Shown: positions 10,190-63,310 of the stretch, piece after piece
Layout: the number at the start of each line of letters is the position of its first letter
How positions within the stretch are numbered: the stretch's first letter is position 1
Virus record (IMG/VR): IMGVR_UViG_3300029911_000001
Coordinates: 124,001-188,000 of that record
Direction: 5' to 3' (one strand)
Length of the DNA stretch: 64,000 nt
The notes under the pieces: generated by a model
Told to the model about the DNA's origin: nothing
Database searches by the model: none
What the model saw: the letters and a program-made list of their open reading frames with translations, nothing else
Translations under genes and position numbers: made by a program

Positions 10190-10190
10190 A

Positions 10191-11249
10191 GTGGCAAACG
10201 ATAAGGGCTTCTACCGTCGTCGGAGAGGCATATATGAACACATGGAAGTAGGAGCACTAGGGTGGCTTGACGTTGCCATTCACGACTGGCTGTGTGGTAA
10301 CGCACGAGCCATTATGAATAGTGGAAAATGCCCTGCGGGTGTGTGGATTGGTTCCGTCACCATGATGTGGGACAGGGCCGGTCGCGACCCCGATGTACCC
10401 CTTCGCAAGCTTCAGAGGCATGTTTTGAAGTTGGAAAAACAGGGCTACTTCAAGCGATTTGCTATCAACAAAACCACCCATGCATACGTAATTGACAAGC
10501 TAATTGTGCAGGACTTGACGCGAACTGACTACGTGGTAAACGCAAAAGAAACAACAGATTGGCGTCACCCAAAATATGACGTTGACGTTGAAGTGACGTC
10601 CAATCGACGTACAGATGACGTTGACGTGACGTTCAAGCGACGTACAGATGACGTACAGCCATGCTCCATTAATGAGAAGGAAGAGAAGGAAGATACGTTA
10701 GAGACGAGCGAAACGGACGAAACGGGGGGTAAGCCTAGCTTACCTGTCGCCGTCCCTAAAGCCCCTGTTCAGACCAAACTTAAGACCGTTGGAGACATGC
10801 CTGATTCATACTTTGAGTCGGAGCCCGATATGTCTGGGTGGTCTTCGACTAAGAAGCAAGCGTGGTACACCGAAAAGAACCGTCGTGCGGAGAGAGTTAA
10901 GTTCGTATTAGCGAATTCTTCTGTAGATGAGTCCGACGAGGAAAACGAAGGGGGTTATGCCGGTCTGGATGACATTCGTGATTGGCATGAGACTAAGTTT
11001 GGAGTATCCGGTGAGCGTTTGCGTAACTGCATTATTTATCATTTGGACTACTCCGACCGGGAATATTTCCGTAAGGAACCTATCACCCCCGCTTCTATGA
11101 ACCGTATCAAGTTCGTCAACCTGCTCAACGAGAATACGCCTATCGGCTGGACTCCTGAGAAGCACAGGACCTACAAGCGTAGACCTAAGGTGGAAGTGCC
11201 CTCAGCCCCTGCTGAACCCTCGAAGTACCAGCCTAAGGAAATCATATGA
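10191..11249 (+). CDS. Putative replication initiator (lambda O-like architecture)
   Basis: GTG start with RBS GGAGTAGG; lies between helicase and DnaC-like loader; N-terminal wHTH-like region followed by an internal phased repeat. Confidence 0.6.
   Translation: MANDKGFYRRRRGIYEHMEVGALGWLDVAIHDWLCGNARAIMNSGKCPAGVWIGSVTMMWDRAGRDPDVPLRKLQRHVLKLEKQGYFKRFAINKTTHAYVIDKLIVQDLTRTDYVVNAKETTDWRHPKYDVDVEVTSNRRTDDVDVTFKRRTDDVQPCSINEKEEKEDTLETSETDETGGKPSLPVAVPKAPVQTKLKTVGDMPDSYFESEPDMSGWSSTKKQAWYTEKNRRAERVKFVLANSSVDESDEENEGGYAGLDDIRDWHETKFGVSGERLRNCIIYHLDYSDREYFRKEPITPASMNRIKFVNLLNENTPIGWTPEKHRTYKRRPKVEVPSAPAEPSKYQPKEII
10584..10660 (+). repeat. Seven tandem 11-bp units starting GACGT (iteron-like)
   Basis: GACGT at 10584, 10595, 10606, 10617, 10628, 10639, 10650; CGACGTACAGATGACGT exact at 10605 and 10638. 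Confidence 0.85.
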
Positions 11250-15300: not shown

Positions 15301-15724
15301 AAGCTTGATGGCTTCGGGTCTTATTGTCGATGGCCTCGCGGCGTTCGATAACAACCTATGGTTGGCTTGCGACTACGTGAACGGTGTCAACAAGCTGGAG
15401 TGCCCGGAACCGGTGGCAGTTGTTGACGATAACGGTAATGAGATTCACCCCACGGAAATCGAGATGGCTGAACGTGAGGAAGTCTTCAAGTGTGCTGTGA
15501 AGCGTGACTGGATTCGTCGTGCTCATCAGTTCTCTGACCGCTACTTCGAGGGCGACCGTAAGCTCATGAGTTACTGCCTGAAGGAAGTTCACAACTGGAA
15601 GTATTGGTGCGACCTTCAGCGTGAGTACGTCGATGTAGACTACAAAGACCTCATCGAAGAAGAAGACAACACCAAGATTCAGGACACGGTAGCTTGCGCT
15701 GGAGGTGTGTGTAGTTTTATGTAG
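12302..15724 (+). CDS. nrdJ: Class II (B12-dependent) ribonucleotide reductase with intein
   Basis: NCT, LLCGSGVGFS, GGVRRSA, NP/CVEI active site split by the intein, CVKPAGT, C-terminal CAGGVC; no class I Tyr-Tyr pair and no adjacent beta subunit. Confidence 0.85.
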   Translation: MSIKALQSYTFHSKYARYNPELKRRDTWSESNDRVLNMHLSRYPQIAEELNWAFEQSKAKRVLGSQRALQYAGTPVLRKHARVYNCTVSYCDRLRFFQESLWLLLCGSGVGFSVQKHHVAKLPDFLEGRQLGVPQREVEFYIPDDIEGWADALGNLLATYFPHPDYPECAGANIKFNYSLIRPKGSKLSSGVGKAPGPEPLAKSLEAIRGLLDRCLADGQARLRSIDAYDVVMHASDAVLSGGVRRSATICIFSPDDDLMARAKIGDWYYTNPQRGRSNNSAMLVRSATSREDFHGLMGWVKQFGEPGFVWSDSTEMMFNPCFHPEERISTINGMERLIDMFHTGQPNQVAYDSRAGKSDELDLNRKGIQLSSASKVKLTQTQAPLFQLNTEHGHTLRVTENHEFPTLRGRLKLSSLVPGDTLLLPSAELPFGKDGSFAAGLVLGLITGDGFVSGHQAFVDVWKADFDVLDTVKEYIHSLIEQVPSNANGVREYTQLDWVKQGEDKRRIGGLRLYRFLRENLNIEDPATIKDNIPECVWRGCREMVVGYLQGLMFADGGLNLSDHKKVPTFSWRLNQSNEALLVEVQRLFAMFAVVSRVTPRRKAGRTLLPDGRGGSKLYATKDNFELILNRPNSIRAYEVVGCFGRKKDILQSLMGYCGTNCRKPERFITKVKSITPCGVSDVYCLTQYTSNTVIANGLVTGQCVEIGMYPVDVTTGLSGWAFCNLCEINGKKCKTKEDFAIAARAAAIIGTAQAGYTDFEYLGQTTKNIADREALLGVSITGMMDSPEILFDPKIQREMAQLVVATNKEIAAKIGIRQAARCTCVKPAGTTSCILGTSSGIHAHHSKRYIRRVQANMLEAPYQFLAEKNPRAVEKSVWSKNGTDSVIAFCIETAEGARTRKDMTAIKLLEHVRLTQNNWVEAGRNAELCTQPYLRHNVSNTINVRPDEWDEVEAYIYEHRQDFAGVSLLSSTGDLDYPQAPFSAIHTPAEIVKLYGDGSLMASGLIVDGLAAFDNNLWLACDYVNGVNKLECPEPVAVVDDNGNEIHPTEIEMAEREEVFKCAVKRDWIRRAHQFSDRYFEGDRKLMSYCLKEVHNWKYWCDLQREYVDVDYKDLIEEEDNTKIQDTVACAGGVCSFM
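13265..14413 (+). mobile_element. 383-aa intein with LAGLIDADG homing endonuclease
   Basis: Starts CFHPEE, block B TENHEF, LGLITGDG and LQGLMFADG motifs, ends ANGLVTGQ|C; removal restores NPCVEI. Confidence 0.92.
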
Positions 15725-19066: not shown

Positions 19067-19142
19067 GCGGGGGTAGATTAGCGGCTAAATCATCGCCCTT
19101 ACAAGACGACTATCGTGGGTTCGAGTCCCACCCTCCGCACCA
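19067..19142 (+). tRNA. tRNA-Val(UAC)
   Basis: Cloverleaf, loop CT-TAC-AA, encoded CCA. Confidence 0.9.
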
Positions 19143-19172
19143 AGATTCGCAGTATTAGATGTTCAGATGTAT

Positions 19173-19247
19173 GCGGGATTAGTTCAGTGGTAGAACGCTT
19201 CCTTGCCAAGGAAGAGGTCGAGGGTTCGAATCCCTCATCCCGCTCCA
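19173..19247 (+). tRNA. tRNA-Gly(GCC)
   Basis: CTTCC-TT-GCC-AA-GGAAG; CCA. Confidence 0.95.
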
Positions 19248-19309
19248 AAAGTTTAGAGTCTCAGTGACTCGATGATGTATAGGTATTTGACAATTTAGGT
19301 TTGAATTTT

Positions 19310-19383
19310 GGGGTCGTCGTTCAGTGGGAGGACAACACGCTTGCACCGTGTCAACAGGGGTTCGAATCCCCTCGGCTCCACCA
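19310..19383 (+). tRNA. tRNA-Ala(UGC)
   Basis: ACACG-CT-TGC-AC-CGTGT; G3.U70; CCA. Confidence 0.9.
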
Positions 19384-19391
19384 AAAACGCT

Positions 19392-19652
19392 CTAAATGTG
19401 GTAACGTCCACGTTGCAACGTCCCAGATTTGCAAATTGGGTGCACAAAGGGGATGAAGCCCGTCTTTGCTTGTAGCAACTCGGTGGAATTGTGGTTTTTG
19501 TTATAATTGTTTGAGGAGTGGTTGGTACATTTTCTACACCATGAATTAAGGGTTATAGTAGTACCATTCTTATTCCTTCTGGTACGAACCCCAAAATACT
19601 CCTTTGAGGCGGGATGGTTGGTGTTACATTTAGAACACAGCTTGGATTCCAT
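19392..19652 (-). pseudogene. Antisense Zn-finger ORF, probable HNH-type endonuclease remnant
   Basis: ATG with RBS GGAG; KLCSKC...WCRKC; no complete nuclease domain. Confidence 0.45.
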
Positions 19653-19701
19653 TGCTTCTCCTAAGTTAGCTAATACAATGGAATCCAATAGTTGAAAAGA
19701 T

Positions 19702-20030
19702 TGCACCAGAGACTTCGGACAATCGCGACGTGAGCGCAATACTCACTTCGAGGAAATTCGGGGCATCATAGAACAACCTAGTGGGTAACGCCCACGCAGT
19801 GGAACATCACTGACGACAAGTGCCACAGAGACGAGCCTCTTCAGTGAGGAGTGAAACGCGGTAAACTTCTAGGTGATGCAACTTCAAATAGGCCGACAGG
19901 TGCTGTTCGTACCGTTATGAATCGGCGGGTTGAGGGCTAGAGCGTTGTGGTAACACAACGTCGAGACGAATGATTGTCGAACCACCGAAAGGTGGGGAAC
20001 AGAACCCCGGTTATAGAAGTCTCTGGTGCA
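19702..20030 (+). ncRNA. rnpB: RNase P RNA (bacterial type A-like)
   Basis: 15-bp P1 TGCACCAGAGACTTC/GAAGTCTCTGGTGCA; GAGGAAATTCGGGC (19750), AAGTGCCACAGA (19818), GTGAAACGCGGTAAAC (19851), ACAGAACCCCGGTTA (19999). Confidence 0.92.
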
Positions 20031-20040
20031 GTAAAGTTTT

Positions 20041-20157
20041 GAGTGCTCGTACCTCAGTGAACGCCGATGCGATGTTTGCCATCGGGGCGGTAGAGGACGG
20101 CCTACCCGAGCAGTTAGCGGATGGAAGAAGTCATGGGTTCGAACCCCATCGGCACTC
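20041..20157 (+). ncRNA. tRNA-like RNA with a hairpin inserted in the D-loop and no clear anticodon arm
   Basis: D-stem CCTC/GAGG, T-arm ATGGG-TTCGAAC-CCCAT, acceptor-like GAGTGC/GCACTC. Confidence 0.5.
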
Positions 20158-20271
20158 AAATAAGATGGACGACACCTGTCCAAGGACGTTCCACATGTGA
20201 GTGTGGTGTAGGCAAGCGGATATGCTCCGAAGCTGAGTCCAGTGGTGTGACGCCGGGGAGAGCACCGGGCT

Positions 20272-20345
20272 GCGGGATTAGTGTAGTGGTAACACGTCAT
20301 CCTTCCAAGTTGAAGTCAGGGGTTCAAGTCCCCTATCCCGCTCCA
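20272..20345 (+). tRNA. tRNA-Gly(UCC)
   Basis: Loop CT-TCC-AA; CCA. Confidence 0.92.
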
Positions 20346-20438
20346 AGTTCAAGCCATCCCAATACTGACGCACAAAGGCGGGTACGGTTCTAGGGTAATG
20401 GTGCGGGAGGATAACCTAAACCGCAAGTTTAGATTCAT

Positions 20439-20515
20439 GCACCGATAGCCAAGACGGTAAGGCGACAGATTGCAACCCTGTTAATGCGGGAGTTCGATTC
20501 TCCCTCGGTGCTCCA
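20439..20515 (+). tRNA. tRNA-Cys(GCA)
   Basis: Loop TT-GCA-AC; U73; CCA. Confidence 0.92.
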
Positions 20516-20524
20516 AGTTTCAAA

Positions 20525-20600
20525 GGGCGATTAGCTCAGTTGGGAGAGCGTTTCCATGGCATGGAAAAGGTCAAGGGTTCGAGCCCCTTATTGTCCACCA
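20525..20600 (+). tRNA. tRNA-Ala(GGC)
   Basis: TTTCC-AT-GGC-AT-GGAAA (A32-U38); G3.U70; CCA. Confidence 0.93.
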
Positions 20601-20879
20601 GTTTAGAAGAGGATGGAAAACTGGAAAGTTCCCGGTAACGGTGACACAATCCGGCTCACTGGCTCTCTAAAAGACACTGCACGTCTCTAAATGGCAGCGT
20701 AAGCGGCACGACACGTCCACCAAGTTTGGGGTAGCACTAGCGCACACCGCATATCAGGCGCGTGTCGGCAATAGGCTTGCAGATAGAAGTAAAGCTGCGG
20801 AACACAGTTTGAACTCGTGGTACGGACACAGTTTCGTCGTCAGCCGGTGAGCTAACACCGCTGGTGCCACGCGAAGTTT

Positions 20880-20954
20880 GGTGCTGTATCATAATGCCAA
20901 TGAACTCCCCTGTCGAGGGAGCTTATGAGGGTTGAACTCCCTTCAGCACCGCCA
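20880..20954 (+). tRNA. tRNA-Asp(GUC), atypical D/T loops
   Basis: CTCCC-CT-GTC-GA-GGGAG; G73; D-loop lacks GG; T-loop TTGAACT. Confidence 0.75.
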
Positions 20955-21014
20955 TTTTTTCAACTACAGAACCCTTATATGTAAGTCACTTCTGATACAT
21001 ATAAGGGTTCGATA

Positions 21015-21635
21015 ATGGCTAAAAAGAAAGAGAAAGAAGAAGCAATCAGGTTACGTGTTGAACACCGTCTCTCATTGGAAGTTATTTCTAAACAGTTAGG
21101 TGTATCTCAGAGTAGTTGCTCCTTATGGTTGAGAGGTTACCCTCTATCGGAGCAAGAAAAGAGCACTCGCAAACCCCCCTCTACGAAAGGTATTGCGCGT
21201 AAGATTCGGGGGGATAGGTCAAAGTTTTCTAATGTAGTTGACGGGCAGGAACTTACAAAATCTCGTAAGGGGAGAATAGCTGAATCTGCAATTCTATTTC
21301 GGTTGGCTCTTCATGGTCTGACCCCCTACGGTTCCCCGTTTGATGGTGATAAGACCGATTGGGTAGTAGAGAATGCACAAGGTAGAACTATGAAGGTACA
21401 AGTGAGGTGGGCGCGTGAGGCTAGAAAAGGGCTACCTTTTATCTCACTTCGAATTTCGGATGGGAGGCACAACACTCGTCGGTACACGGAAAATGAATTT
21501 GACTTTATTGTGGCTTACGACCTGTACACAGATACGGCTTATGTATTTAATCAAGAGGATGTAAGGAACAATACCGCACTTATCGCAGTATCAGAGGAGA
21601 GGGCGGAGAAGTGGCAACAGTTACTGGATTTTTGA
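21015..21635 (+). CDS. Free-standing PD-(D/E)XK endonuclease with N-terminal HTH
   Basis: KGRIAE...TDWVVE...KVQVR...FDFIVAY pattern; inserted in the tRNA array. Confidence 0.75.
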   Translation: MAKKKEKEEAIRLRVEHRLSLEVISKQLGVSQSSCSLWLRGYPLSEQEKSTRKPPSTKGIARKIRGDRSKFSNVVDGQELTKSRKGRIAESAILFRLALHGLTPYGSPFDGDKTDWVVENAQGRTMKVQVRWAREARKGLPFISLRISDGRHNTRRYTENEFDFIVAYDLYTDTAYVFNQEDVRNNTALIAVSEERAEKWQQLLDF

Positions 21636-21648
21636 TGAGGAAACAAGT

Positions 21649-21852
21649 ATGTGTCAAGCGTTTACACCGGACATGCGGAACTTCGATGAGAAGCCGTACA
21701 CACCGGATGAGCAGCGAGTAGTCAAGTACCTAGTTGAACTCACCAATGGAACGATTGGCGGCGGTGACGACCCTATCGGGTTCCTCATCGCGAGTCATGC
21801 AACGCTTTCTGACTTGAATGTGAAGCGTTGTCGAGAGGAAGCACATGGTTGA
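21649..21852 (+). CDS. Small hypothetical protein
   Basis: ATG with RBS GAGGA. Confidence 0.55.
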   Translation: MCQAFTPDMRNFDEKPYTPDEQRVVKYLVELTNGTIGGGDDPIGFLIASHATLSDLNVKRCREEAHG

Positions 21853-22009
21853 CTTTGAAGCAAACGGTTGGCGTAAGTTGACAGCAGAAGAGCAGGAAGG
21901 CATTCGTGAGTTTGAGCGAGTGATGAAGGAAGAGACCATACCTGCCATCGTGAAGACTATCCGTCTCCGTCAGGAATTGGCTAATGAATATCGAGGAATT
22001 TTGTACTAA
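21845..22009 (+). CDS. Small hypothetical protein (54 aa), not in the ORF track
   Basis: MVDFEANGWRKLTAEEQEG...; RBS GAGGA; overlaps the previous stop. Confidence 0.55.
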   Translation: MVDFEANGWRKLTAEEQEGIREFERVMKEETIPAIVKTIRLRQELANEYRGILY

Positions 22010-22014
22010 TGTTT

Positions 22015-22091
22015 GGGGATGTAACTCAGTCGGTCAGAGTATTCGCCTGTCGAGCGAAAAGTCGCGGGTTCGAACCCCGTCATCCCCGCCA
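22015..22091 (+). tRNA. tRNA-Asp(GUC)
   Basis: TTCGC-CT-GTC-GA-GCGAA; canonical; CCA. Confidence 0.95.
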
Positions 22092-22096
22092 AGTGT

Positions 22097-22200
22097 GAGA
22101 TGTAGTGTCAAGGTGTGGCGTTTGTATACGAACGTGAGCATCATTAGAACGGGGCCTTGTTGCGGCTCTGGTGTGGGTGAAAATCCCGCCGTCTCCGCCA
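22097..22200 (+). ncRNA. Degenerate tRNA-like unit
   Basis: GAGATG/CGTCTC acceptor-like, ends GCCA; T-like arm GTGGG-TGAAAAT-CCCGC; no 7-nt anticodon loop. Confidence 0.4.
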
Positions 22201-22271
22201 GTTTCAAATGTTGCAGCACGGTTTCAGTGAGTCCTGAAATGGCTGAAGGTTGGAGTAAGCTGATTGAATCT

Positions 22272-22346
22272 ACACCCGTAGCTCAGAGATAGAGCGTCTC
22301 CTTGACGTGGAGAGGGTCGGGGGTTTAATTCCCTCCGGGTGTACCA
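22272..22346 (+). tRNA. tRNA-Val(GAC)
   Basis: TCTCC-TT-GAC-GT-GGAGA; CCA. Confidence 0.92.
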
Positions 22347-22374
22347 AAGCAGGAGAGTTTGAAGTTACCAGAGT

Positions 22375-22432
22375 CGGGATGTAGCTCAGTGGTAGAGCCT
22401 AAAAGTCGCAGGTTCGATTCCTGCCTTTCCTA
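22375..22432 (+). pseudogene. tRNA-like unit lacking the anticodon arm
   Basis: Canonical D arm GCTC-AGTGGTA-GAGC joined by CTAAAAGTC to canonical T arm GCAGG-TTCGATT-CCTGC; weak acceptor stem. Confidence 0.7.
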
Positions 22433-22644
22433 TACGACGCTCTGGTGGACTGAAAGGCGGGAAGCGTATCGTGCTCGTATTCACATTGCGCGTACCGCCC
22501 AAGTTTATTAATGATGAGTTTCAAGTTCGAGAGTTGGAACCAGCAGCGGAACATATAGCAGCCCTCACAGCTATCGCGTGCTAGGTAAGGGCAAGGACGA
22601 AGAGGCAGCATGGAAAGATGCTGTCCGTCGCAAGAAACAGATTT

Positions 22645-22723
22645 GGGGCAAGGGACTGCCGGGGGTGGTCACCTCATTCGCAATGAGGAATTCAGCGGGG
22701 TTCAAGTCCCCGTTGCTCCACCA
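22645..22723 (+). tRNA. tRNA-Ala(CGC), atypical D arm
   Basis: CCTCA-TT-CGC-AA-TGAGG; GGGGCAA/TTGCTCC with G3.U70; CCA. Confidence 0.85.
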
Positions 22724-22731
22724 AAAGTTTC

Positions 22732-22806
22732 GGGGTTATAGCTCAGAGGGAGAGCACCGCATTTGCAATGCGGGGGTCGAGATTTCAAAATTCTCTAACT
22801 CCACCA
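22732..22806 (+). tRNA. tRNA-Ala(UGC), second copy
   Basis: CCGCA-TT-TGC-AA-TGCGG; G3.U70; CCA. Confidence 0.88.
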
Positions 22807-22826
22807 CTTTATTAGTCAAAAGTTTC

Positions 22827-22904
22827 GGGCGGTCTGGAATAAGAGTTTCAGACAGGCTGCACATAGAGGCAGAAGGGTGAGTTCGAATCCCTTCACGTCC
22901 ACCA
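22827..22904 (+). ncRNA. Degenerate tRNA-like unit with Ala-type acceptor end
   Basis: GGGCG/CGTCC-A-CCA (G3.U70); GTTCGAAT in an enlarged T-loop; anticodon unresolved. Confidence 0.45.
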
Positions 22905-22921
22905 ATTTTGAGGTTGATTGA

Positions 22922-23179
22922 ATGAAGTTCACACGTCGTCAGTTCTTCGCAGGGCTCCCGGTATTCATCATGCCGGGGTGGATGAAGGCGATAGCCTCAT
23001 GGTTCCAGCCTGAGGTCGCCGTAGTAAAGGCTCCTCTAATCAAGGGCTCGACCCAACTAAATGATGTCCTGCCAAAGCGTGTGATGGTACCAACGTTCGA
23101 AATAGTTTCGTGTCCGACAATCTTGCTCAAGGAAATCAAGGAGCGTAGGTTCAGGATACAAAGTGGGCCGGTAGCATAA
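22922..23179 (+). CDS. Small protein with twin-arginine-like N-terminus
   Basis: MKFTRRQFFAG; RBS GAGG. Confidence 0.55.
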   Translation: MKFTRRQFFAGLPVFIMPGWMKAIASWFQPEVAVVKAPLIKGSTQLNDVLPKRVMVPTFEIVSCPTILLKEIKERRFRIQSGPVA

Positions 23180-23243
23180 TGGGAATGCACATTCCTTGCG
23201 GCGAGTAACCGCACCCACCCGGCTCCAGTTTGAAAGGAGCTTC

Positions 23244-23426
23244 ATGGCTAAGTACACAGTACGTAACAAGGAAGGGCACCTTCTCGGAAGGACTGATAGC
23301 CCTGAGGTTTTGGTAGAAGAGATTTGCGAAGTATGTGAGAAGCAAGGAATTATTTACCACGTACACCCCGAGTCGGAAGAGCATAAAGGGTCTCCTAGCT
23401 TTCGACCAATGAAGTTTAGCAGATGA
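23244..23426 (+). CDS. Small hypothetical protein
   Basis: ATG with RBS AAGGAG. Confidence 0.55.
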   Translation: MAKYTVRNKEGHLLGRTDSPEVLVEEICEVCEKQGIIYHVHPESEEHKGSPSFRPMKFSR

Positions 23427-23452
23427 AATGGAAAAGCACGAAGGTTAAGTTT

Positions 23453-23527
23453 GGCCCTGTCCTCCAACGGTCAGGAGAGTGGGTTCTCAACCCGACAACA
23501 AGGGTTCAACTCCCTTCAGGGCCACCA
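23453..23527 (+). tRNA. tRNA-Glu(CUC)
   Basis: Loop TT-CTC-AA; GGCCCTG/CAGGGCC; CCA. Confidence 0.88.
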
Positions 23528-23534
23528 GTTTTAT

Positions 23535-23609
23535 GGCGCATTCGTTCATTGGTTAGGACCGGTGTTTTTCAAGCACCAGAAGAGGTTTCGATTACCTCAT
23601 GCGCTACCA
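23535..23609 (+). tRNA. tRNA-Glu(UUC)
   Basis: GGTGT-TT-TTC-AA-GCACC; CCA. Confidence 0.88.
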
Positions 23610-23992
23610 ATTTCGCTGGGAGGTCGGTGTGGACTCAGGCGACTCGCTGCAACCGAGTAGGCGTTGCGGGAGATATGCGAGGGAAAGATTGATCTTCCTG
23701 TCAGAACATCGGCAGTTGAAGTGGGCACCGGGGCTGAAGGGTCATCGCTAGAACAGGGTGGCCCTTCAGCAAAGTCTGCCGACCATTTGATACAATAGCT
23801 GGATGAGACGAGGCTACCAATGAACTGTACTAAGTGTGGTGAATCAGCCCTCGGAGTAGCTCTTGATGGACTACCTTACTGTCATCGCACAGAGTGTATT
23901 TTATGGAAGGTGGAATTGCAACGGTATCGGGATTTGCAAGCTCTCCCTTTTCCAGCACCGCAGCGACCGTTTGCAAAAAGTTTGGTGTTTAA

Positions 23993-24068
23993 GCGGGATT
24001 AGCTCAGTTGGTAGAGCGTTTCCTTCCCAAGGAAAATGTCGCGGGTTCGAGTCCCGCATCCCGCTCCA
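23993..24068 (+). tRNA. tRNA-Gly(CCC)
   Basis: TTTCC-TT-CCC-AA-GGAAA; canonical; CCA. Confidence 0.95.
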
Positions 24069-24086: not shown

Positions 24087-24794
24087 ATGAGCTTAGCATT
24101 GTACCCCACCGGCCAGCTTAGATTCTGGACGGAACAAGAAATCTCTCTTCGCGATGGTCTCATCCATCGTCTCTTCCATGTTGTGAAAGCTCCGCTTCAG
24201 ACTCTGAACAAGGCGTGGCGTTTCGAACGTGTTGAAGGCCCCCTACTCACTCCTGCCGACTACATCAGCCCAGCCTACACCGAGGATGACCTATGGGTAA
24301 CCAAGGGTCTAATCGCGGCTCAGGGTGTCGCCATGAGAGCGGAGACCACCGCATCCAGTTACATCTACGCCAAGCATCTGATGTCTCAGGAAGGCGGTAG
24401 CAATAAGCTACCTCTCTGCGTGTGGCAGTCAGGCAAGAGCTTCCGCAAGGAAGAGAGCGATGGTGCATCCGCATCCCGGCTCCGCTTCTTCGAGTTCTAT
24501 CAGCTTGAGTTCCAGTGCATCTACAGCAAGACCACCGGAGCCGATTACGTCGCCCCGGTCACATCTCGCGTGATGAAGGAACTTGAACTCATCACGGGGC
24601 ACAAAGCCCGTCTCGTTCGCTCCGACCGTCTCCCCTCTTATAGTGAAGCCACCTTCGATGTTGAAGTAGACTTCAACGGGCACTGGCGTGAGATGTGCAG
24701 CATTTCACAACGCACCGATTTCGAGGGTGCCAAGGTGTTGGAAGTCGCCATCGGTCTCGACCGGCTGGTAGCAGTCATCGGGGGTGGTGTCTAG
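24087..24794 (+). CDS. Minimal class II aaRS catalytic core, alpha2-type GlyRS-like, no anticodon-binding domain
   Basis: MRAETT, QSGKSFRKE, RFFEFYQLEFQ, LPSYS, EMCSISQRTDF, LEVAIGLDRL. Confidence 0.78.
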   Translation: MSLALYPTGQLRFWTEQEISLRDGLIHRLFHVVKAPLQTLNKAWRFERVEGPLLTPADYISPAYTEDDLWVTKGLIAAQGVAMRAETTASSYIYAKHLMSQEGGSNKLPLCVWQSGKSFRKEESDGASASRLRFFEFYQLEFQCIYSKTTGADYVAPVTSRVMKELELITGHKARLVRSDRLPSYSEATFDVEVDFNGHWREMCSISQRTDFEGAKVLEVAIGLDRLVAVIGGGV

Positions 24795-25549: not shown

Positions 25550-25880
25550 GAAGTCCTACACGCTTGAGGAGATGCTGAAGGCCCTCAAGTTCCGCCACCC
25601 CATCAAAGACTCGTACACGTTGCCGGAGCTAGTCTCCTCCAAGCCTAACCTCAGTGCAGGGGGTAGCTTTGGCTCCGCGTGCATGATTTATGACCCCGGC
25701 TTCTACGCCAAGGACATACGGAGAGTCAACCGTCTCCTCGCCAAGAAGAACATGTGTCTGGTGGTTCCTAAGTCTGGCTGGGCTAAGGTCGTCCGTATTG
25801 ATGACACCAAGGAACTGCCCGACGACTACTTCGAGTATGCAGAGAATCTTATCGGGGAGTGTTTCTGTAAGTCACGATGA
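25485..25880 (+). CDS. Hypothetical protein with three short N-terminal repeats
   Basis: KTFTLRDML / KSYTLEEML / DSYTLPELV. Confidence 0.65.
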   Translation: MATKTFTLRDMLDIRDINLPIKKSYTLEEMLKALKFRHPIKDSYTLPELVSSKPNLSAGGSFGSACMIYDPGFYAKDIRRVNRLLAKKNMCLVVPKSGWAKVVRIDDTKELPDDYFEYAENLIGECFCKSR

Positions 25881-26638
25881 AGGCACAACTACTCAGCGAC
25901 CTCCACACGGAGTTCCATAAATTCTTCGGCCCCTTGGAATTCCTTCGGTGGATTCCCTACGAGCCTGACTTGGACTTTCTGTTCCTGCTCGGGGACATCG
26001 TTGTGCCCGGAGTGCAGGACGTAGATGAGTGCCGTCAGGTGTTCGAGTATCTTGGCACCAAGGCCAAGCACGTTCTCTACGTTGTCGGCAACCACGAATA
26101 CTACGGCTCTCTCGGTAAGGATAGAACCGATGACATCCTACGTTACATCATGCCAAGCAATATGGTCTGGCTCGACAACAACGATGTGACCCTCGACGGA
26201 GTTCACTTCTACGGTGGAGCGATGTGGTTCCCCGACCAGCCATTCAACCGGCTGCACGAGCATGAGATAAACGACTTCAGCCTCATCCCGGACATCCACG
26301 ATTGGGTGTACCAGAGCAACGCACGCTTCCGTGAGAACGGTGCTGACTTGATTCGGACAGACACCATCGTCCTGACTCATCACCTTCCATCGCGAAAGAG
26401 CACGCCGCCGATGTACCGGGAGAGCACCACCAACTGCTTCTTCGTCTCAGACGAGGAGAGACTCATCGAAGCATCGAAGCCTAGCCTGTGGCTCCACGGT
26501 CACACCCATCATCCGTGCGAGTACACGCTGTGTCAGACGCAGGTCGTATGCAACCCGTACGGCTACCCTGCGGAGAGAAAGAGAATGGGGCCGTTCAAAC
26601 CAACTGTGTTTGAATTTGAACCTAAGAAATTTCTATGA
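25877..26638 (+). CDS. Calcineurin-like metallophosphoesterase
   Basis: SDLH, GD, GNHE, THH, HGHTH. Confidence 0.9.
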   Translation: MKAQLLSDLHTEFHKFFGPLEFLRWIPYEPDLDFLFLLGDIVVPGVQDVDECRQVFEYLGTKAKHVLYVVGNHEYYGSLGKDRTDDILRYIMPSNMVWLDNNDVTLDGVHFYGGAMWFPDQPFNRLHEHEINDFSLIPDIHDWVYQSNARFRENGADLIRTDTIVLTHHLPSRKSTPPMYRESTTNCFFVSDEERLIEASKPSLWLHGHTHHPCEYTLCQTQVVCNPYGYPAERKRMGPFKPTVFEFEPKKFL

Positions 26639-28730: not shown

Positions 28731-28854
28731 CGGTCGTATCCTCGTCTCAGGTATCCCAAATAAGGGGTCTATCCATGAGCTTGATAGCCAAAATTATTTT
28801 GTGACTACCGACGCCTATAAGTATAGGGGCATCTCGCCTCGTTATGGGAGTCAC

Positions 28855-31800
28855 ATGTTTAAGTTGTTTCAAAAATTCGGGATTCTTGTTACCTTGGTTT
28901 TCGCCTTTGGTTGCTCTATAGGACAGGCACAAATAAATCCAGAACAAATTCGGTGGCCTCTGCTCACAGGGACAGGTGTTCCTACCCTCTCCTGCTCGTC
29001 CGTTAACTATGGGCAACCTTACCAGAACACAGCAGTTACACCGAATACTTACTACACATGCGGCACAGATGGTTGGCAGATACGTATATCCCTCGGGCCT
29101 AAAGTGAATGCGACGAGCGTAGCCTTTGGCGCGGCATCATCCTGCGCAAACACTGCTGATCCAACAATGACACTGGATTCAACCTGCGCTATTAGGGCGG
29201 CGATTGCTTACGTTTATGCCCACGGTGCCAATGGAGTCTACCCAGCATTATATCTACCCGTTGGCAACTACAAGACTACCGCTGAGATACGAATACCCTG
29301 CGACGTATGGCTGGAGGGTGACGGGGTAACGGCAACCGTTATTTCCTTGACCAACAATGCAGCAAACGGAATTACCGTGTACGGCGATAACTCCGGCTCC
29401 GGTGATGCGTGGCAGTGCGTCGGCGGAATGCATGGTCTTGGTATTACCGCCATTGGCGCTCATCTTTACACCGCCGACCAATTGGAGATTGTCGGGTCTA
29501 CTGCATACACATTGAGGGATGTACTGGTACAGGGCGGCGGTGGCAGAGGTATCAATGTCACTGGCGGCTCAGAACGCTTGGACGCTGAAAATATCTTCAT
29601 CAACACAGTTCGCTGGCCTATGCTGTGGAAAGGTAACGAGAACCATCTCCGAAAATTGAACATTGCAGACCCCGGAAACTCCTCGGACAACTGGTGCTTT
29701 GCACAGGGAAATTGCGTTACCACACACACTTTCCCCAACTTTAATTGGAGCCTTCAGCAGACTCTAGTTTCAGCGGTTGGCTCAGGAACCCGCGCCTCCT
29801 ATGTTGTCACTGACACGGGGGGTGCCGGTTCTACTTTGGGTGTCTCCCCCATCGGCATTGGGCAATGGTTCACTGTTTCTGGAGTCACTGGAACGACCGG
29901 ACTGAATGGTGTGTTTCAGGTCGCATCGGCGACGAATGGCACCGTGACAGGTGGCTGCGCCGCGAACAGGTGCTACACCATTACTGCGGTAAATTCGACA
30001 AGTGGAACCGGCACCGGACTTGGCTCCGCAACGTTCCAACCGACTATTGTTGCAGATAGAAACGCCGCCGTTTATGCCTCCGGCTCAACATTCAAGATTG
30101 ATGGAGGATCGATCAAATCGCTAGAGTCATCTGGATGCTTTGATATTGGTAGCACGTTCGGAAGCACAATCGCTAACATTTACTGCGAGGGCTATCCGGT
30201 GAACGGCCAGCCCCACGTAAACTCATCAGTTACTGAGGGTAACCTCCCTGCTGAAACAACTACAACTGCCAGTCTTGGAGCTTCTGCGACAACCGTCACC
30301 GTGGTGGATACCTCGTGGTTCCCTAACTATGTGCAGACGGCATCTGACGCTAATAGTGCAGATATAATACAAGGAAAAATTGCCCCTTGCGACTACATCG
30401 AGCCACCAAACACCGGCTACAATGTGCAATCTGCCTGCGCTCCAACTGGCGTGTTGAAAGGCATGTGGGAAGCAGTCCAGATAACGATGACATCGACAGG
30501 TGCCCTGCTACAGCGGTGCCAGTCTGGGTCTACGGTAACGTGTACTGCCTATACGAGCGGACCTGTATGGCCTTCTGGCTCTCTGATTGCCAACGGACCT
30601 CCGGGAAACTATTCCTACCTCAAACTGGACACCGACCATTTTAATGCAATTGATGAGCCGGGGGCTAACTGGGCTGCGTATTGCAACGATCAATCATCTT
30701 TTATATGCGGAGAAATCATTGGTGGTGGTATTGAGAATGGTCTCACAACCGGGAGTTCTGGGTCTACGCTGGGAAGGCTTCAGCAAGCCCAAATCTTGTT
30801 CGACAATGATGAGTGGTGGGGCGGTATAAATTCGGCATCGCCGGGAAGTTCCTACTATGGCGACGGAACAATCAAAGCTGTAGGGCTTGGCATCGTCGCG
30901 CAAGCTACGGGAAGCACGTTCGGAAATGGGTATGCGGCGGATTCAAATGCTGTCAATGGGAAATTCACCGATGGCACAGCCAATAACGTCAATGACTCAG
31001 CACCCGGATTCGTCAATGTTCAATCGGCTGATACCTATTACCCTTCCTCTGAGTACAACAATCTCAGCAATGGCATGATCTTCAGCGCTTCGAGCGGTCT
31101 CTTCCGTAAAAACTTGAATGCCTACGGAGACCCCATTACTGGAAACAATCCGGGCGCGGGGTCGAATGGCTACAACAATGGAGCAGAGGTCGCAAACTCG
31201 ACTTGCACTTACGATACTCCGCTGACTTCAGGTACGCACTCGCTGAATCGCTGGTGTTTCGTGGGGGGACCAGGCAATAGTGGCACAGCAGCCGGTGTTG
31301 AATATGACACCTACAATACCGGGTCGTCAATATGGGTGACTCAGTTCAAAATAGACGGCACAGGAGCCATCACATTTGGGGGAGTTCCGACCTTTACAGA
31401 TGCAATTTTCCAAGCCCTACACATGGCTGCACCGGGGGATAAGGTTTATTTGGGCGATCCCGGCAACTGGCTTGAACGCGACAACACACTAAGCGGGGCA
31501 ACTCATTTTGCCGCACCGGGGTTTGACTTTGACAATAATGGTTCAGGTTCTCCACTAAACATCATGGACGGGGCTGGTGGCACATATCACGGGTACCTCT
31601 GCCTCAACTTGGATTCGTGTATCTCTAGAAATGGAAGCTCTAATCAGTTTCACTTTGGAAGCGGAGCCTATGGAGCCAGTGACGGAGCACTCTTTGCAGC
31701 CAACGCCACCTTCGGCGGCACGCTAACCGCGTTGAACGGGAGTATAAACTCCGTGATGAATGGAGCTACAGCAGAGTTTGGGATGAGTTCGTATCTCACA

Positions 31801-34800
31801 GCACCGTGTACTGCGACCGTAGCCAACACATCGCACGTTGTCACTATTCTCAGCGGATGCACGTTCCCTAGCCCGATGACAGGGTACGTGTTTCATTTGG
31901 GCGACAGTGTGTCAGGTTCCTTGGATGGCACACTGACCTATCTGTCGCCCACGACCGCCACGATGAATGTCGCGTCTACTTGGACTTCCAGCAGCGGGAT
32001 CAGCGCGACCGTGAACGCCGGAGGTACTGGCTATGCGGTCGGTGATACCGGGACAGTCAATGGCGGAAACAGCAACGCACGGTATTGGGTGCAATCCGTT
32101 TCGGGAGGTGTAGTCACTGGAATTTACATGAACAGCGGTGGGTCTGGATATACAAGTGCAACGGGAGTTGCGACTGCAACGGGAGGCATTCAGCCCGGAA
32201 GCGGCACGGGCCTTACACTCAATACCACCGCAGCATTGACACCGGAAACGCTCTATTTTGGCCCTGATAATTGCACATCGGCAAATGCTTGGTTCGCCGC
32301 CGCAAGTGGAGGAAGAGGTACTCTATCTCCGGGTGTTTATATGTCGTCCTGTCCACTTCTCCAAGGCAGTGCAAATTCATTTTTCATCGAGGGTACAACC
32401 AAGACAAATACCATCCTTGTCGATGCAGACTCTTCATCGCACCCTGATTTTATCGGAGTCGGGAATAACGGCTCCAACTCTGTTTCACACATCGCTAATA
32501 TAAGCGCGGTCGGAAACAAGAATACCACCCGTGGCTGCATCTCGATCTTTGGCCCAACGGATCACACATCGCAAGACTTCTCCTGCTATGATTCGGGCGC
32601 AGCATCCCTATACCTGAACAATGCCGTTTCAGCCAATATAAATCAGTTCTCTTCCGCCCCCTCGAATACTTCGATTGTGCAGCCGGTGAATTGCGTCAAC
32701 TACGTAGCCAGTGGCCCGTCTGAGTTTCACAGTTTGACGTGCGAAGGTGCGTCTGGGTACTCGATCAACAATACTGGACAAATGACGATCACCGCCAGCC
32801 AGATTGATTATGGGTTGCAAGGCCAACTTTACAACAGCAGTACTGGTTACGTGTACATCAACGGCGGGACTCTACTTGGATGTGAGCTGACCACATGCGC
32901 TAATGGAGTGACCAATTATGGCGTAGTAAATGTTGAGGATGGAGGGGTGTCAGTCTCCTATCACGGATATTCTGGCTCGATCTTCTATGGCTCGAATGTT
33001 GCGCTCGATGGTCTAAACTCTACCTTTGTGTTTGATTCTGGGTCGCTATGCACAATCGCCGGGTTAAGACTTGGACTAAATGGGATCACAGACAATGCAG
33101 GATGCGCCATCGCCGGACCAACTGTAAATGAGAGCACCGGAGTTGGGACTGTAGACTATCCAACGTCGCAATCGTTGCAAACGGGAATTTACGGCAATCA
33201 ACTAATAATGGCTTCCGGTCCTCTCGCCTTTAGATATGGCTGCGCTACTTATGGTAATTCTTCATGCAACGTGACTCCAATGGCACAGGTGCCGCTTGCC
33301 GCATCGACCACATGGGCGATTCAATTTCAAGGGCAGTGGAACACTGACACTACAGTTCCATTCATCAAGACCGTGACTTATGCCAGTCCTACATTCACGG
33401 TTGCAGGACAGACGGTAACATGCAAGCAGGCTACCACGAATTTCAATACCACTCGCTCCGGTCAGTTTGTCTGCTATATTGCTCCTTCATCCATCGGTCA
33501 GGTTGGATTTACGGGGTCGTGGATTATCTATCCGAACGGAATGAATACGCCGACAGGACTCGGTGCCCCTTATTGTGCTGCCGGGATATGCAACTCTACT
33601 GGCACAGCGTGGGGTTCCAGTTATGGAATCGTGGGCTCAGGGTCAAATGTAGTTCTGGCAACGTCTCCAACCCTCCAAAATAGTTTGACGGTCACTAATG
33701 CAGGTAACGTGTCTTTGACACTGACAGATACAGCCACTGGCACCATCAGCAACACCGAGTTGCTAGGAGATGGTTCGGTAAATCACTACGACGACACAGC
33801 AGTTGTCAATTACTTTGATTATGCTAGTGGCGTTTCCAACCTCTATCTATCCACTAATCAAACTACCACGACGTTTCCAAATACGTTCAATGCATTCCCG
33901 CATGGGCTTTATGCGGGAAGCACTAACCAGTTCCAGATTGATGCCAGTGGCAACGTGACAGCACCCTCTGTCAATGTGTCAGCCACAAACTACCCATTAT
34001 TTGGTAACATCCCCGGAGTCGGGAATGTGTGGTCCGCTGTGAATAGTAACTGCAAACTTTCGCAGTTGTCTGGCGGGTCGGGTGGTTACACTGATGGAGG
34101 GTACTGCTCCACACAACAATTCCTTAGCACTGTTCCCGGGTGGAACGATCTTGGAACTATTGGTGCTTATCTTCCAGCCGCGCAGAGTATTACGATGAAC
34201 AACTACTCAACTGGAATTGAGTCAGTGTTGGCTATTCAAGTAAACTCCCCGGCGGGAGGAGACCAGAATGGCATCGACTTCCAAGATCACGTTCGCAACG
34301 CTCTGAATCATGGAGGAGATCAAGGCCAGTCTGACCTTCAAATTCAGTCCTACGAGGGAGGAGAACCCACAGGGACAGTAACATCAGTCACACCTGTAGC
34401 TTCTGGAGTTCAAGTTGCACTAACATGCTCTGCGAACTGTGACCAGATGGGAATCATGTCTGGCCCACTGGTCGATATGACAGAGGCAATTCCTGCCACG
34501 GTTACTTACGTCAGCACATCGGGCGGTTTGGCTACGGTAACGTCCAGCAATACTGTTCCCGTTTCGACATCGGGTACGCTCGCCAGTGCTGCCAATGCTC
34601 AATGGTCAAACGCGACAACTTATCCTTCGGGCATCATCGTTCTATACATAGGAGCGGCGTACTACCAAAGTTTGCAAAACACAAACGTTGGGCATGAGCC
34701 GGATACCTCTCCTAGTTGGTGGACACTAGTATCTCCGCCTAGCGGGAGGCTATCCTCGAACATTGTAACGTGGAACATGAACACCGGCACTACTCTGACA

Positions 34801-63068: not shown

Positions 63069-63155
63069 GGGCAGATGCGTGAGTGGCTAAAACGGGCTGG
63101 CTGTAACCCAGCTTCCCTAGTGGATTCGGAGGTTCAAATCCTCCTCTGCCCACCA
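63069..63155 (+). tRNA. tRNA-Tyr(GUA)
   Basis: GCTGG-CT-GTA-AC-CCAGC; long variable arm; CCA. Confidence 0.93.
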
Positions 63156-63166
63156 AAATTGAATAC

Positions 63167-63254: not shown

Positions 63255-63310
63255 CTTTCGTGACTACCGACCTCTTTAAGTAGAGGTATCTCTTGGAGGT
63301 CGGTAGGTTC

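What the first reader, a model, noticed from the sequence alone, without database searches (positions are those of the whole stretch)
24087..24794. Minimal 235-aa GlyRS-like catalytic core directly after tRNA-Gly(CCC)
Seen: class II motif 2 (FRKE...RFFEFYQLE) and motif 3 (EVAIGLDRL), plus alpha2-GlyRS-like RAET and SISQRTDF, with no anticodon-binding domain. Inference: it may charge tRNAs independently of the anticodon (including damaged or non-canonical ones in this array), make Ap4A-type nucleotides, or glycylate a non-tRNA acceptor.
Basis: partly seen in the sequence, partly recalled or inferred. Interest (0 to 1): 0.65.

Follow-up and report, generated by a model that had tools for sequence, protein, structure and literature searches.

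The report
Phage stand-alone mini glycyl-tRNA synthetase core
A huge phage encodes a 235-residue protein that is just the catalytic heart of a glycyl-tRNA synthetase, with its active site intact but no tRNA-anticodon reader; it belongs to a large, uncharacterised phage-only family whose target is still unknown.

Summary
Window 24087-24794 (+) is an intact 235-aa ORF starting 18 nt after tRNA-Gly(CCC). It is a class II synthetase core closest to dimeric (alpha2-type) GlyRS: NCBIfam E 5e-14, PDB profile E 6e-13, structural Z 19.5. The ATP-binding residues and the three GlyRS pocket glutamates are invariant; only Ser361 is replaced, by Ala. No anticodon-binding domain exists in the protein, in the held genome, or in five complete related phages, so it is not a split enzyme.

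It is not a one-off. There are at least 243 clusters at 50% identity, nearly all 210-260 aa, on huge-phage contigs and in cultured Caulobacter, Brevundimonas, Sinorhizobium and Xanthomonas jumbo phages. It is almost absent from cellular genomes. It is under purifying selection (dN/dS 0.07) and predicted to form a homodimer.

Adjacency to tRNA-Gly is not a family trait. The gene does tend to lie near tRNA arrays and tRNA-repair or translation genes (RnlA, Pnkp, Pth2, CysRS). It has no conserved partner gene.

In several lineages a similar AlaRS-like mini core lies beside it. In one clade a CUA suppressor tRNA does.

Best reading: an active glycine-activating enzyme that probably charges tRNA-Gly through the acceptor end alone. 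The acceptor is inferred, not shown.

The parts
24087..24794 (+). ORF of 235 aa (P0001): stand-alone class II synthetase core of the alpha2-GlyRS type
   Evidence: dN/dS 0.074 against the L091 orthologue
24216..24254 (+). Motif 1 region (residues 44-56, WRFERVEGPLLTP), at the centre of the predicted dimer interface
   Evidence: Residues 47-56 lie in the predicted homodimer interface; W44, E50, G51, P52 and P56 are invariant or nearly so
24336..24350 (+). RAETT (residues 84-88). E86 aligns with T. thermophilus GlyRS Glu188, a glycine-pocket residue
   Evidence: Alignment to 1ati_A; R84, E86, T87 and T88 are invariant in A1 and A2
24441..24515 (+). Motif 2 (F119-Q143). R120 = Tth R220 and E141 = Tth E239. 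The loop 122-133 is two residues longer than in GlyRS and conserved (D125, G126, A127, L132, R133)
   Evidence: the loop has pLDDT below 50, meaning it is flexible
24699..24722 (+). SISQRTDF (residues 205-212), matching the GlyRS signature (A/S)xRTD(F/Y)D. R209 = Tth R311
   Evidence: S205, S207, R209 and D211 are invariant
24741..24767 (+). Motif 3 (E219-L227, EVAIGLDRL). By identical spacing E219 = Tth E359, A221 = Tth S361 and R226 = the motif 3 arginine
   Evidence: E219, A221, D225 and R226 are invariant. The mapping rests on spacing and my own knowledge of Tth GlyRS, not on a printed alignment
23993..24068 (+). tRNA-Gly(CCC), 18 nt upstream on the same strand; bacterial-type identity set with an encoded CCA
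   Evidence: no terminator-like site between it and the ORF on the + strand
19067..24068 (+). Array of 14 tRNA genes (Val, Gly, Ala, Gly, Cys, Ala, Asp, Asp, Val, Ala, Ala, Glu, Glu, Gly), ending at the ORF
   Evidence: The same array type flanks the gene in L091 and L156
24794..25183 (+). 129-aa ORF whose start overlaps the synthetase stop codon. It has no known family and is not conserved next to the gene in other lineages
25877..26638 (+). Metallophosphoesterase (253 aa) 1.1 kb downstream; also downstream in the closest relative L091
   Evidence: phrog_1649 E 8e-40; Pfam Metallophos; only a faint ApaH-like match, E 0.002

Best explanation
P0001 is a stand-alone, homodimeric class II catalytic core descended from the dimeric (alpha2-type) glycyl-tRNA synthetase. 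Its adenylation site is intact, so it most likely binds ATP and glycine and makes glycyl-adenylate. That step rests on residue conservation. [quoted passage not shown] On this reading it is one piece of the huge-phage toolkit that keeps translation and the tRNA pool working during infection. Its hosts use an unrelated GlyRS type. What it adds beyond the host enzyme is not known.
For: Fold and family. The AlphaFold model has pLDDT 85.3 and pTM 0.84. The best structural matches are N. equitans GlyRS (Z 19.5, 222 residues aligned, rmsd 3.0) and human GlyRS (Z 18.2), though ThrRS and ProRS follow closely at 17.8. Sequence profiles separate them clearly: GlyRS E 5.7e-13 against 8e-5 for the next family.

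Active site. E86, R120, E122, Q139, E141, R209 and D211 align with Tth GlyRS E188, R220, E222, Q237, E239, R311 and D313. E219 and R226 fit E359 and R366 by spacing. All are invariant in 30 and in 8 diverse members.

Selection. dN/dS is 0.074, with 121 of 171 differences at third codon positions.

Dimer. The complex prediction score is 0.86 (ipSAE) against a best control of 0.00. That mark was reached by 20 of 30 proteins solved as pairs and by 1 of 23 solved as single chains. The runs agree in at least 93% of contacts and the partner's pLDDT is at least 87. The interface includes motif 1. The pass may partly reflect the model's memory of solved class II dimers.

Context. 29 of 80 related loci have a tRNA within 1 kb and 40 of 80 within 10 kb. 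Recurrent neighbours are RnlA RNA ligase, CysRS, Pth2 and Pnkp. In several lineages an AlaRS-like mini core lies beside it.

No conserved non-tRNA partner gene was found.

Precedent. tRNA-Gly minihelices without an anticodon arm are charged by GlyRSs (PMC9908026). Tiny GlyRS-B fragments show tRNA-dependent aminoacylation in vitro (PMC11602164). From my own knowledge, natural PylRS enzymes of about 275 aa work without an anticodon-binding domain.
Against: No activity was measured, and no RNA run could be listed. Most members lack not only the anticodon-binding domain but also the Ins1 insertion, which in human GlyRS contacts the acceptor stem (PMC9908026). tRNA affinity and specificity may therefore be poor. 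From my own knowledge, every stand-alone class II core characterised so far (AsnA, HisZ, EpmA/PoxA, amino acid:carrier-protein ligases) has a non-tRNA role. The tRNA-Gly adjacency is not conserved. The enrichment near tRNAs is only about three-fold over a rough background taken from this one genome. The pocket Ser361 is Ala here, so glycine specificity is likely but not certain.
Confidence: 0.45

Rival explanations
1. The protein makes glycyl-adenylate but passes glycine to a non-tRNA acceptor such as a carrier protein, another protein, a small molecule or modified DNA. This would parallel the amino acid:carrier-protein ligases, EpmA/PoxA and AsnA.
For: It lacks both the anticodon-binding domain and Ins1. 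The carrier-protein ligase Bll0957 (3mey) is a close structural match at Z 17.5, a similarly small stand-alone core of 296 aa. From my own knowledge, all characterised stand-alone class II cores act on non-tRNA acceptors.
Against: No partner gene is conserved. The best neighbour cluster occurs in 13 of 80 loci and is a CysRS, and there is no conserved downstream ORF. No carrier-protein or transferase neighbour was seen. The genomic context is tRNAs and tRNA repair. The sequence is much closer to GlyRS than to the SerRS-type ligases. The long motif 2 loop, which in class II enzymes contacts the acceptor end, is conserved.
Confidence: 0.25
2. It is a dedicated, anticodon-blind synthetase for a phage amber-suppressor tRNA(CUA), forming a code-change module.
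For: In one syntenic clade (L047, L053, L055, L056, L058, L059, L064, L069) and in the cultured Sinorhizobium phage Phosso, a tRNA(CUA) is the only tRNA within 10 kb. It lies 62-1887 nt upstream of the gene. L010 has one 1.7 kb away. The window's genome also has a tRNA(CUA), about 80 kb away. Phage synthetases for suppressor tRNAs are reported as rarely found (bioRxiv 10.1101/2021.08.26.457843).
Against: The adjacency is essentially one inherited synteny block. Most family members have no tRNA(CUA) nearby. I found no sign of TAG recoding. In the genome, standard-code coverage is 0.889 and 55 of 221 ORFs end in TAG. In the clade loci, reading TAG as sense did not raise coding coverage and TAG still ends 24 of 240 ORFs. 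The suppressors have G73 or A73 and varied acceptor stems, unlike tRNA-Gly.
Confidence: 0.07
3. It is mainly a dinucleoside-polyphosphate (Ap4A-type) synthase, using the adenylate site for signalling or RNA capping rather than for acylation.
For: From my own knowledge, human GlyRS makes Ap4A by direct ATP condensation. A metallophosphoesterase lies 1.1 kb downstream both here and in L091. It has a faint match to symmetrical Ap4A hydrolase, E 0.002.
Against: The glycine-pocket glutamates are invariant, which direct ATP condensation would not require. The phosphoesterase match to ApaH is at noise level, and the gene is not a conserved neighbour across the family.
Confidence: 0.07
4. It is a catalytically idle regulator or scaffold, like HisZ or the DNA polymerase gamma accessory subunit.
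For: HisZ (Z 17.4) and POLG2 (Z 17.3) are near-equal structural matches. There is a weak HisZ profile hit at E 0.055.
Against: Every catalytic residue of the class II site and of the GlyRS pocket is invariant across a family that has diverged below 40% identity. dN/dS is 0.074. Neither HisG nor a polymerase is a conserved neighbour.
Confidence: 0.05

Closest known systems
Dimeric (alpha2-type) glycyl-tRNA synthetase, catalytic domain (for example T. thermophilus 1ati, M. tuberculosis 8t5n, N. equitans 5z5e)
   Same: Class II fold, motifs 1-3, the GlyRS-specific RxET, QxE and RTD(F/Y) signatures, three pocket glutamates, and a predicted dimer through motif 1.
   Different: It has no C-terminal anticodon-binding domain, no Ins1 or other insertions in most members, Ser361 replaced by Ala, and a motif 2 loop two residues longer. 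It scores 52 bits against a family cut-off of 312. It is half the size of a normal GlyRS (235 against about 450-500 aa).
PylRS enzymes that lack the N-terminal domain (for example M. alvus, about 275 aa)
   Same: A natural class II enzyme of similar size without an anticodon-binding domain. Foldseek TM about 0.5-0.58 and profile E 1e-4. It is the nearest functional precedent for anticodon-blind charging by a bare core.
   Different: It is a different subclass and a different amino acid. PylRS has its own tRNA-binding elements. The likeness is one of working principle, not of family.
Amino acid:carrier-protein ligases (Bll0957, 3mey)
   Same: A stand-alone class II core of about 300 aa, some of which activate glycine. 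Z 17.5.
   Different: From my own knowledge, these derive from the methanogen-type SerRS, have a zinc site and sit beside a carrier-protein gene. Here the sequence affinity is to GlyRS and no carrier-protein neighbour exists.
GlyCA 'urzyme' fragments of the bacterial GlyRS alpha-subunit (PMC11602164)
   Same: Minimal glycine-activating class II pieces, found in sequence databases, with tRNA-dependent activity in vitro.
   Different: They belong to the unrelated GlyRS-B (alpha2beta2) type, are far smaller (81 aa and up), and are of doubtful biological provenance. The phage family is a complete core maintained by selection.
HisZ (regulatory subunit of ATP phosphoribosyltransferase)
   Same: A class IIa core without an anticodon-binding domain. 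Z 17.4.
   Different: From my own knowledge, HisZ has lost the catalytic residues and works with HisG. Here the catalytic residues are invariant and no HisG is nearby.

Membership tests
Class II aminoacyl-tRNA synthetase catalytic fold | Antiparallel beta-sheet core with motifs 1, 2 (fRxE) and 3 (GxGxDR) | tested here: met
   Model pLDDT 85.3. At least 500 Foldseek hits have E of 0.001 or better (the tool counts the best 500), and all 50 listed are class II synthetases. Z is 12.6-19.5 to the listed class II synthetases and their paralogues. The motif residues are invariant.
Dimeric (alpha2-type) GlyRS | Best sequence affinity to GlyRS, with GlyRS signature motifs (RPET, QxE, RTDF/YD) | tested here: met
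   NF003211 E 5e-14 and TIGR00389 E 2e-8. Profile against PDB: GlyRS 5.7e-13, next family 8e-5.
Dimeric (alpha2-type) GlyRS | Glycine pocket of three glutamates plus Ser (Tth E188, E239, E359, S361; the residue roles are from my own knowledge) | tested here: inconclusive
   E86, E141 and E219 are present and invariant, but the Ser position is an invariant Ala (A221). The E219/A221 mapping rests on spacing only.
Dimeric (alpha2-type) GlyRS | C-terminal anticodon-binding domain (class IIa HGTP type) | tested here: not met
   The protein ends 9 residues after the motif 3 arginine. There are no fusions among the 150 best family representatives. No match to the C-terminal part of the profile was found in G000 or in five complete phages.
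Dimeric (alpha2-type) GlyRS | Scores above the curated family cut-off | tested here: not met
   52 bits against 312 (NF003211) and 33.5 against 243.3 (TIGR00389).
Dimeric (alpha2-type) GlyRS | Glycylates tRNA-Gly | not testable with these tools
   This needs ATP-PPi exchange and aminoacylation assays.
Class II homodimer | Dimerises through motif 1 | tested here: met
   Complex prediction score 0.86 against a best control of 0.00. The mark was reached by 20 of 30 solved pairs and by 1 of 23 single chains. Runs agree in at least 93% of contacts, partner pLDDT at least 87, interface residues 47-56. This is a prediction, and it may reflect the model's memory of solved dimers.
Amino acid:carrier-protein ligase | Adjacent carrier-protein gene; SerRS-type core with a zinc site | tested here: not met
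   No conserved neighbour. GlyRS outranks SerRS by 8 orders of magnitude. The two conserved cysteines, C111 and C144, are not invariant in the wider family.
HisZ | Loss of catalytic residues; partnered with HisG | tested here: not met
   The catalytic residues are invariant. HisZ profile E 0.055 only. No HisG neighbour.

The most novel reading that the evidence does not exclude
Huge phages carry a set of anticodon-blind mini-synthetases: this GlyRS core and, in several lineages, a neighbouring AlaRS core. These would acylate tRNA 3' ends without regard to the rest of the molecule. That could keep tRNA-Gly charged, and so shielded, when host defences attack its acceptor end (toxSAS pyrophosphorylation of the tRNA-Gly CCA end, PMC11559606). 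It could keep repaired tRNAs usable after anticodon-nuclease attack, since the genes lie among RnlA, Pnkp and Pth2. In the Phosso clade it could load the adjacent CUA suppressor.
Probability: 0.12. Interest if true: 0.85.

Novelty: new variant of a known kind. Interest (0 to 1): 0.55.

Why it matters
From my own knowledge, every natural stand-alone class II core studied so far has left translation for another job. This phage-only family keeps a perfect GlyRS active site in half the usual size and lies among tRNA genes. It would be either the smallest natural GlyRS, which bears on how little protein is needed to charge a tRNA, or a new glycine-transfer enzyme. If it proves orthogonal it would also be a compact part for genetic-code engineering. 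Members occur in cultured phages of Caulobacter, Brevundimonas, Sinorhizobium and Xanthomonas, so the question can be tested directly. It also flags a database problem. These genes are auto-named 'glycyl-tRNA synthetase', 'serine-tRNA synthetase' or 'hypothetical'. That inflates or confuses counts of phage-encoded synthetases.

Tried and rejected
PHROGs gave no hit for the protein.

Split-enzyme idea: no anticodon-binding piece in the 231-kb record or in five complete phages. Rejected.

Conserved operon partner: all-against-all clustering of the flanks of 80 loci and iterative searches on the immediately downstream ORF found none.

Orthogonal tRNA pair: the phage tRNA-Gly genes carry the ordinary bacterial identity set with U73. 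Rejected.

TAG recoding: no signal in the genome or in the suppressor-clade loci.

Zinc or catalytic role for C111 and C144: from the hairpin register (111 + 144 = 255, as for the pairs 120/135 and 114/141) they look like cross-strand neighbours on the face away from the active site. This is inference only. They are not invariant in the wider family. Dropped.

Expression: no RNA run could be listed, and read laying was not used.

Link to Mom-type DNA modification that depends on Gly-tRNA (PMC13219725): no supporting neighbour was seen. Kept only as a remote idea.

Literature searches found no paper that characterises this family.

P0008's contig had no DNA on file. The 431-kb contig behind L001 is not held for searching. 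The AlaRS-like core was not found in the held parts of this phage.

No alternative genetic code was used anywhere.

Full report
OBSERVATION. The ORF at window 24087-24794 (+) is intact and encodes 235 aa (P0001). ARAGORN places tRNA-Gly(CCC) at 23993-24068 (+), the last of 14 tRNA genes between 19067 and 24068. The tRNA's CCA end lies 18 nt before the ATG. A GAGG sits just upstream of the ATG, and there is no terminator-like site between them on the + strand. Co-transcription is therefore plausible, but it is an inference.

WHAT THE PROTEIN IS. NCBIfam matches only dimeric-type GlyRS models convincingly: NF003211 E 5.1e-14 and TIGR00389 E 1.7e-8. Both scores are far below the family cut-offs (52 bits against 312), because only the core is there. 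Against PDB sequences the single protein finds GlyRS at E 1.4e-5. A 30-member family profile finds GlyRS at 5.7e-13, with SerRS (8e-5) and PylRS (1e-4) next.

An AlphaFold model built on the family alignment is confident (pLDDT 85.3, pTM 0.84). Its only disordered stretch is the motif 2 loop, residues 124-133. Foldseek returns only class II synthetases. An exhaustive structural comparison ranks N. equitans GlyRS first (Z 19.5, 222 residues, rmsd 3.0) and human GlyRS second (Z 18.2). ThrRS, ProRS, the carrier-protein ligase Bll0957, HisZ and POLG2 follow at 17.3-17.8. Structure alone therefore says 'class IIa core'. It is the sequence that says 'GlyRS'.

ACTIVE SITE. The alignments to T. thermophilus GlyRS (1ati numbering) give E86=E188, R120=R220, E122=E222, Q139=Q237, E141=E239, R209=R311 and D211=D313. 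The motif 3 block E219-V-A221-I-G-L-D-R226 has the same spacing as Tth E359-P-S361-x-G-x-D-R366. From my own knowledge of the Tth GlyRS structures, E188, E239 and E359 hold the glycine ammonium group, and S361 helps to exclude side chains. All these positions are invariant in 30 members and in 8 further, more distant members. The exception is the Ser position, which is always Ala.

The gene is under strong purifying selection compared with its 83%-identical orthologue. dN/dS is 0.074, and 121 of 171 differences fall at third codon positions.

A homodimer is predicted with a score of 0.86 against a best control of 0.00. That mark was reached by 20 of 30 proteins solved as pairs and by 1 of 23 solved as single chains. 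The runs agree in at least 93% of contacts, and the partner's pLDDT is at least 87. The interface runs through motif 1, residues 47-56. This shows likeness to solved class II dimers rather than proof of binding.

Taken together, this is very probably an active adenylate-forming enzyme, with glycine as its most likely amino acid.

WHAT IS MISSING. There is no anticodon-binding domain: the protein ends 9 residues after the motif 3 arginine. The idea of a split enzyme fails. GlyRS profiles match nothing else in the 231-kb genome record. In the complete genomes of CcrSC, CcrBL9, Domovoi, Phosso and XbC2 they match only the core itself, plus two unrelated full-length class II genes. Most members also lack any insertion between motif 1 and the RxETT strand, which is where GlyRS carries Ins1. 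A handful of members of 306-352 aa have an insertion of about 70 aa there.

THE FAMILY. A word-indexed search found 1,423 proteins. The 120 listed were 180-256 aa long (most 226-256). Many lie on contigs of 200-600 kb, and JGI auto-names them 'glycyl-tRNA synthetase'. An exhaustive profile search of 1.84 billion cluster representatives found 243 at E of 1e-10 or better. None of the best 150 was fused to another domain.

Cultured carriers are Caulobacter phages (CcrSC, CcrBL9, Bertelyvirus), Brevundimonas vB_BpoS phages, Sinorhizobium phage Phosso and Xanthomonas phage XbC2. Two uncultured phage records of about 635 kb carry it as well. From my own knowledge, these proteobacterial hosts use the unrelated alpha2beta2 GlyRS, so this gene is not a recent capture from the host.

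Across 185,579 species-representative genomes only 12 loci appear. Most are on MAG contigs. The one on a large isolate contig (Paraburkholderia, L154) lies among strong PHROG hits and so is phage-derived. The family is in effect phage-only.

The window's phage is a huge phage. The identical protein lies on a 431,749-bp metagenomic contig. The held record is 231 kb, about 74% complete by CheckV's estimate, and carries 32 tRNA genes.

CONTEXT ACROSS THE FAMILY. I fetched 80 IMG/VR loci with 10-kb flanks.
- A tRNA lies within 10 kb in 40 of them and within 1 kb in 29. In the window's own genome about 11% of positions lie within 1 kb of a tRNA (my estimate). The enrichment is therefore real but modest, and the background is rough.
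- A tRNA-Gly is the nearest tRNA only in L008, which is the same phage. Elsewhere the nearest tRNA is Ala, Glu, Arg, Met, Ser, Thr, Val, Tyr, Cys or Pro.
- Two further cases of tRNA-Gly proximity exist. In L091 (83% identity), tRNA-Gly(CCC) is followed by an AlaRS-like gene and then the GlyRS-like gene. In L156 (46% identity), tRNA-Gly(GCC) lies 89 nt upstream.
- Clustering of all flanking ORFs found no widely conserved neighbour; the best cluster occurs in 13 of 80 loci. Iterative searches on the next ORF downstream also found none.

The recurrent neighbours are CysRS (TIGR00435, E 7e-140), T4-type RnlA RNA ligase, ClpP, Pth2 peptidyl-tRNA hydrolase and a Pnkp-like kinase-phosphatase. They are concentrated in one syntenic clade but also occur in several other lineages. 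In cultured phages, RNA ligase lies near the gene in CcrSC. In Phosso the neighbours are RNA ligase, CysRS, Pth and a metallophosphatase. The neighbourhood is thus one of tRNA maintenance and translation.

TWO UNEXPECTED ASSOCIATES.
1. An AlaRS-like mini core. P0268 has 257 aa and matches alaS at E 1.3e-20, 73 bits against a cut-off of 457. It lies directly upstream of the GlyRS-like gene in L091. It lies 190 nt downstream in L061, within about 1 kb in L049, 6 kb away in L071, and immediately upstream of it in L140. It is itself a widespread phage family, with 53 IMG/VR loci, five of them on contigs that also carry the GlyRS-like gene. I did not find it in the held parts of the window's phage.
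2. A tRNA(CUA). In eight loci of one clade, and in the cultured phage Phosso, the only tRNA within 10 kb has a CUA anticodon. It lies 62-1887 nt upstream of the gene. Because these loci share synteny, this counts as about one evolutionary event. I saw no TAG recoding.

MECHANISM. Shown by computation: the class II fold, GlyRS ancestry, an intact adenylation and glycine site, purifying selection, a likely homodimer, the absence of any anticodon reader, and a tRNA-centred neighbourhood. [quoted passage not shown]

Published work makes this feasible. GlyRSs charge tRNA-Gly minihelices that lack the anticodon arm, and the first two acceptor-stem pairs are the universal glycine determinants (PMC9908026, PMC9976931). 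All three phage tRNA-Gly genes share G1-C72, C2-G71, G3-C70 and U73. Against it, Ins1, which helps human GlyRS to hold the acceptor stem (PMC9908026), is absent. In addition, from my own knowledge, every characterised stand-alone class II core has a non-tRNA job. I therefore put tRNA-Gly charging at 0.45, a non-tRNA glycine acceptor at 0.25, and the remaining readings at 0.05-0.07 each.

WHY A PHAGE WOULD WANT IT (speculative). Some host toxins act specifically on tRNA-Gly through its acceptor stem. [quoted passage not shown] One huge phage carries a CRISPR spacer against its host's GlyRS (PMC7162821). An extra GlyRS activity that differs from the host type could matter in such settings. Nothing here tests that.

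NOVELTY. I found no paper that describes or assays this family, and PHROGs has no model for it. It is a new variant of a known kind, a truncated synthetase paralogue, rather than a new kind of system. Its interest lies in its size, its abundance, its restriction to phages and its testability in cultured phages.

Noticed in passing
L091:5082-5855 (+); also L061:10901-11623, L071:16334-17545, L140 near 10001-10720; family loci L093-L145: A second mini-synthetase: an AlaRS-like class II core of 240-257 aa (alaS E 1.3e-20, far below cut-off). It lies beside or near the GlyRS-like gene in several diverged phage lineages and is itself widespread on phage contigs (53 loci). It was not found in the held parts of the window's phage.
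   Followed up: partly
G000 C1 complement 67323-67396 (outside the window); L047, L053, L055, L056, L058, L059, L064, L069 about 60-1900 nt upstream of the gene; L006:4585-4660 (Sinorhizobium phage Phosso): tRNA genes with a CUA (amber suppressor) anticodon. In one syntenic clade this is the only tRNA within 10 kb and sits between CysRS and the GlyRS-like gene. They share the D and anticodon arms and G73, but their acceptor stems have diverged. No TAG recoding was detected in the regions examined.
   Followed up: partly
window 19067-24068; likewise L091:1099-4852 and L156:6544-8775: Apart from one tRNA-Cys, this array holds only tRNAs that read GNN codons (Val, Ala, Asp, Glu, Gly). The same make-up recurs around the gene in two other lineages. 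Other arrays in the genome group other isotypes (Thr/Ile/Gln; Tyr/Leu/Pro/Met/Phe).
   Followed up: no
window 12302-15724 (+): A 1,140-aa ORF with faint to weak Pfam hits to a ribonucleotide reductase class II insertion domain, intein splicing and LAGLIDADG. It may be an intein-containing RNR.
   Followed up: no
window 28801-37275 (+): A giant ORF of about 2,800 aa with no Pfam hit on record, 4 kb downstream of the synthetase core.
   Followed up: no
window 21015-21635 (+): A 206-aa PDDEXK_5-family protein with an N-terminal HTH-like region (weak transposase and sigma-factor PHROG hits), sitting inside the tRNA array between two tRNA-Asp genes. It may be a mobile endonuclease.
   Followed up: no
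L049:11762-11959 and downstream: The AlaRS-like gene appears interrupted after 65 codons by AT-rich sequence, and a 252-aa ORF lies just upstream. This may be an intron or a homing-endonuclease insertion.
   Followed up: no
L154:7063-7548 (+): In the phage-derived Paraburkholderia locus, a GNAT-type acetyltransferase (phrog_1249, E 5e-11) lies directly upstream of the GlyRS-like gene. It is a single case.
   Followed up: no
window 63069-63255 (+): Two adjacent tRNA-Tyr(GTA) genes. The second lacks an encoded CCA end and differs in its acceptor stem.
   Followed up: no
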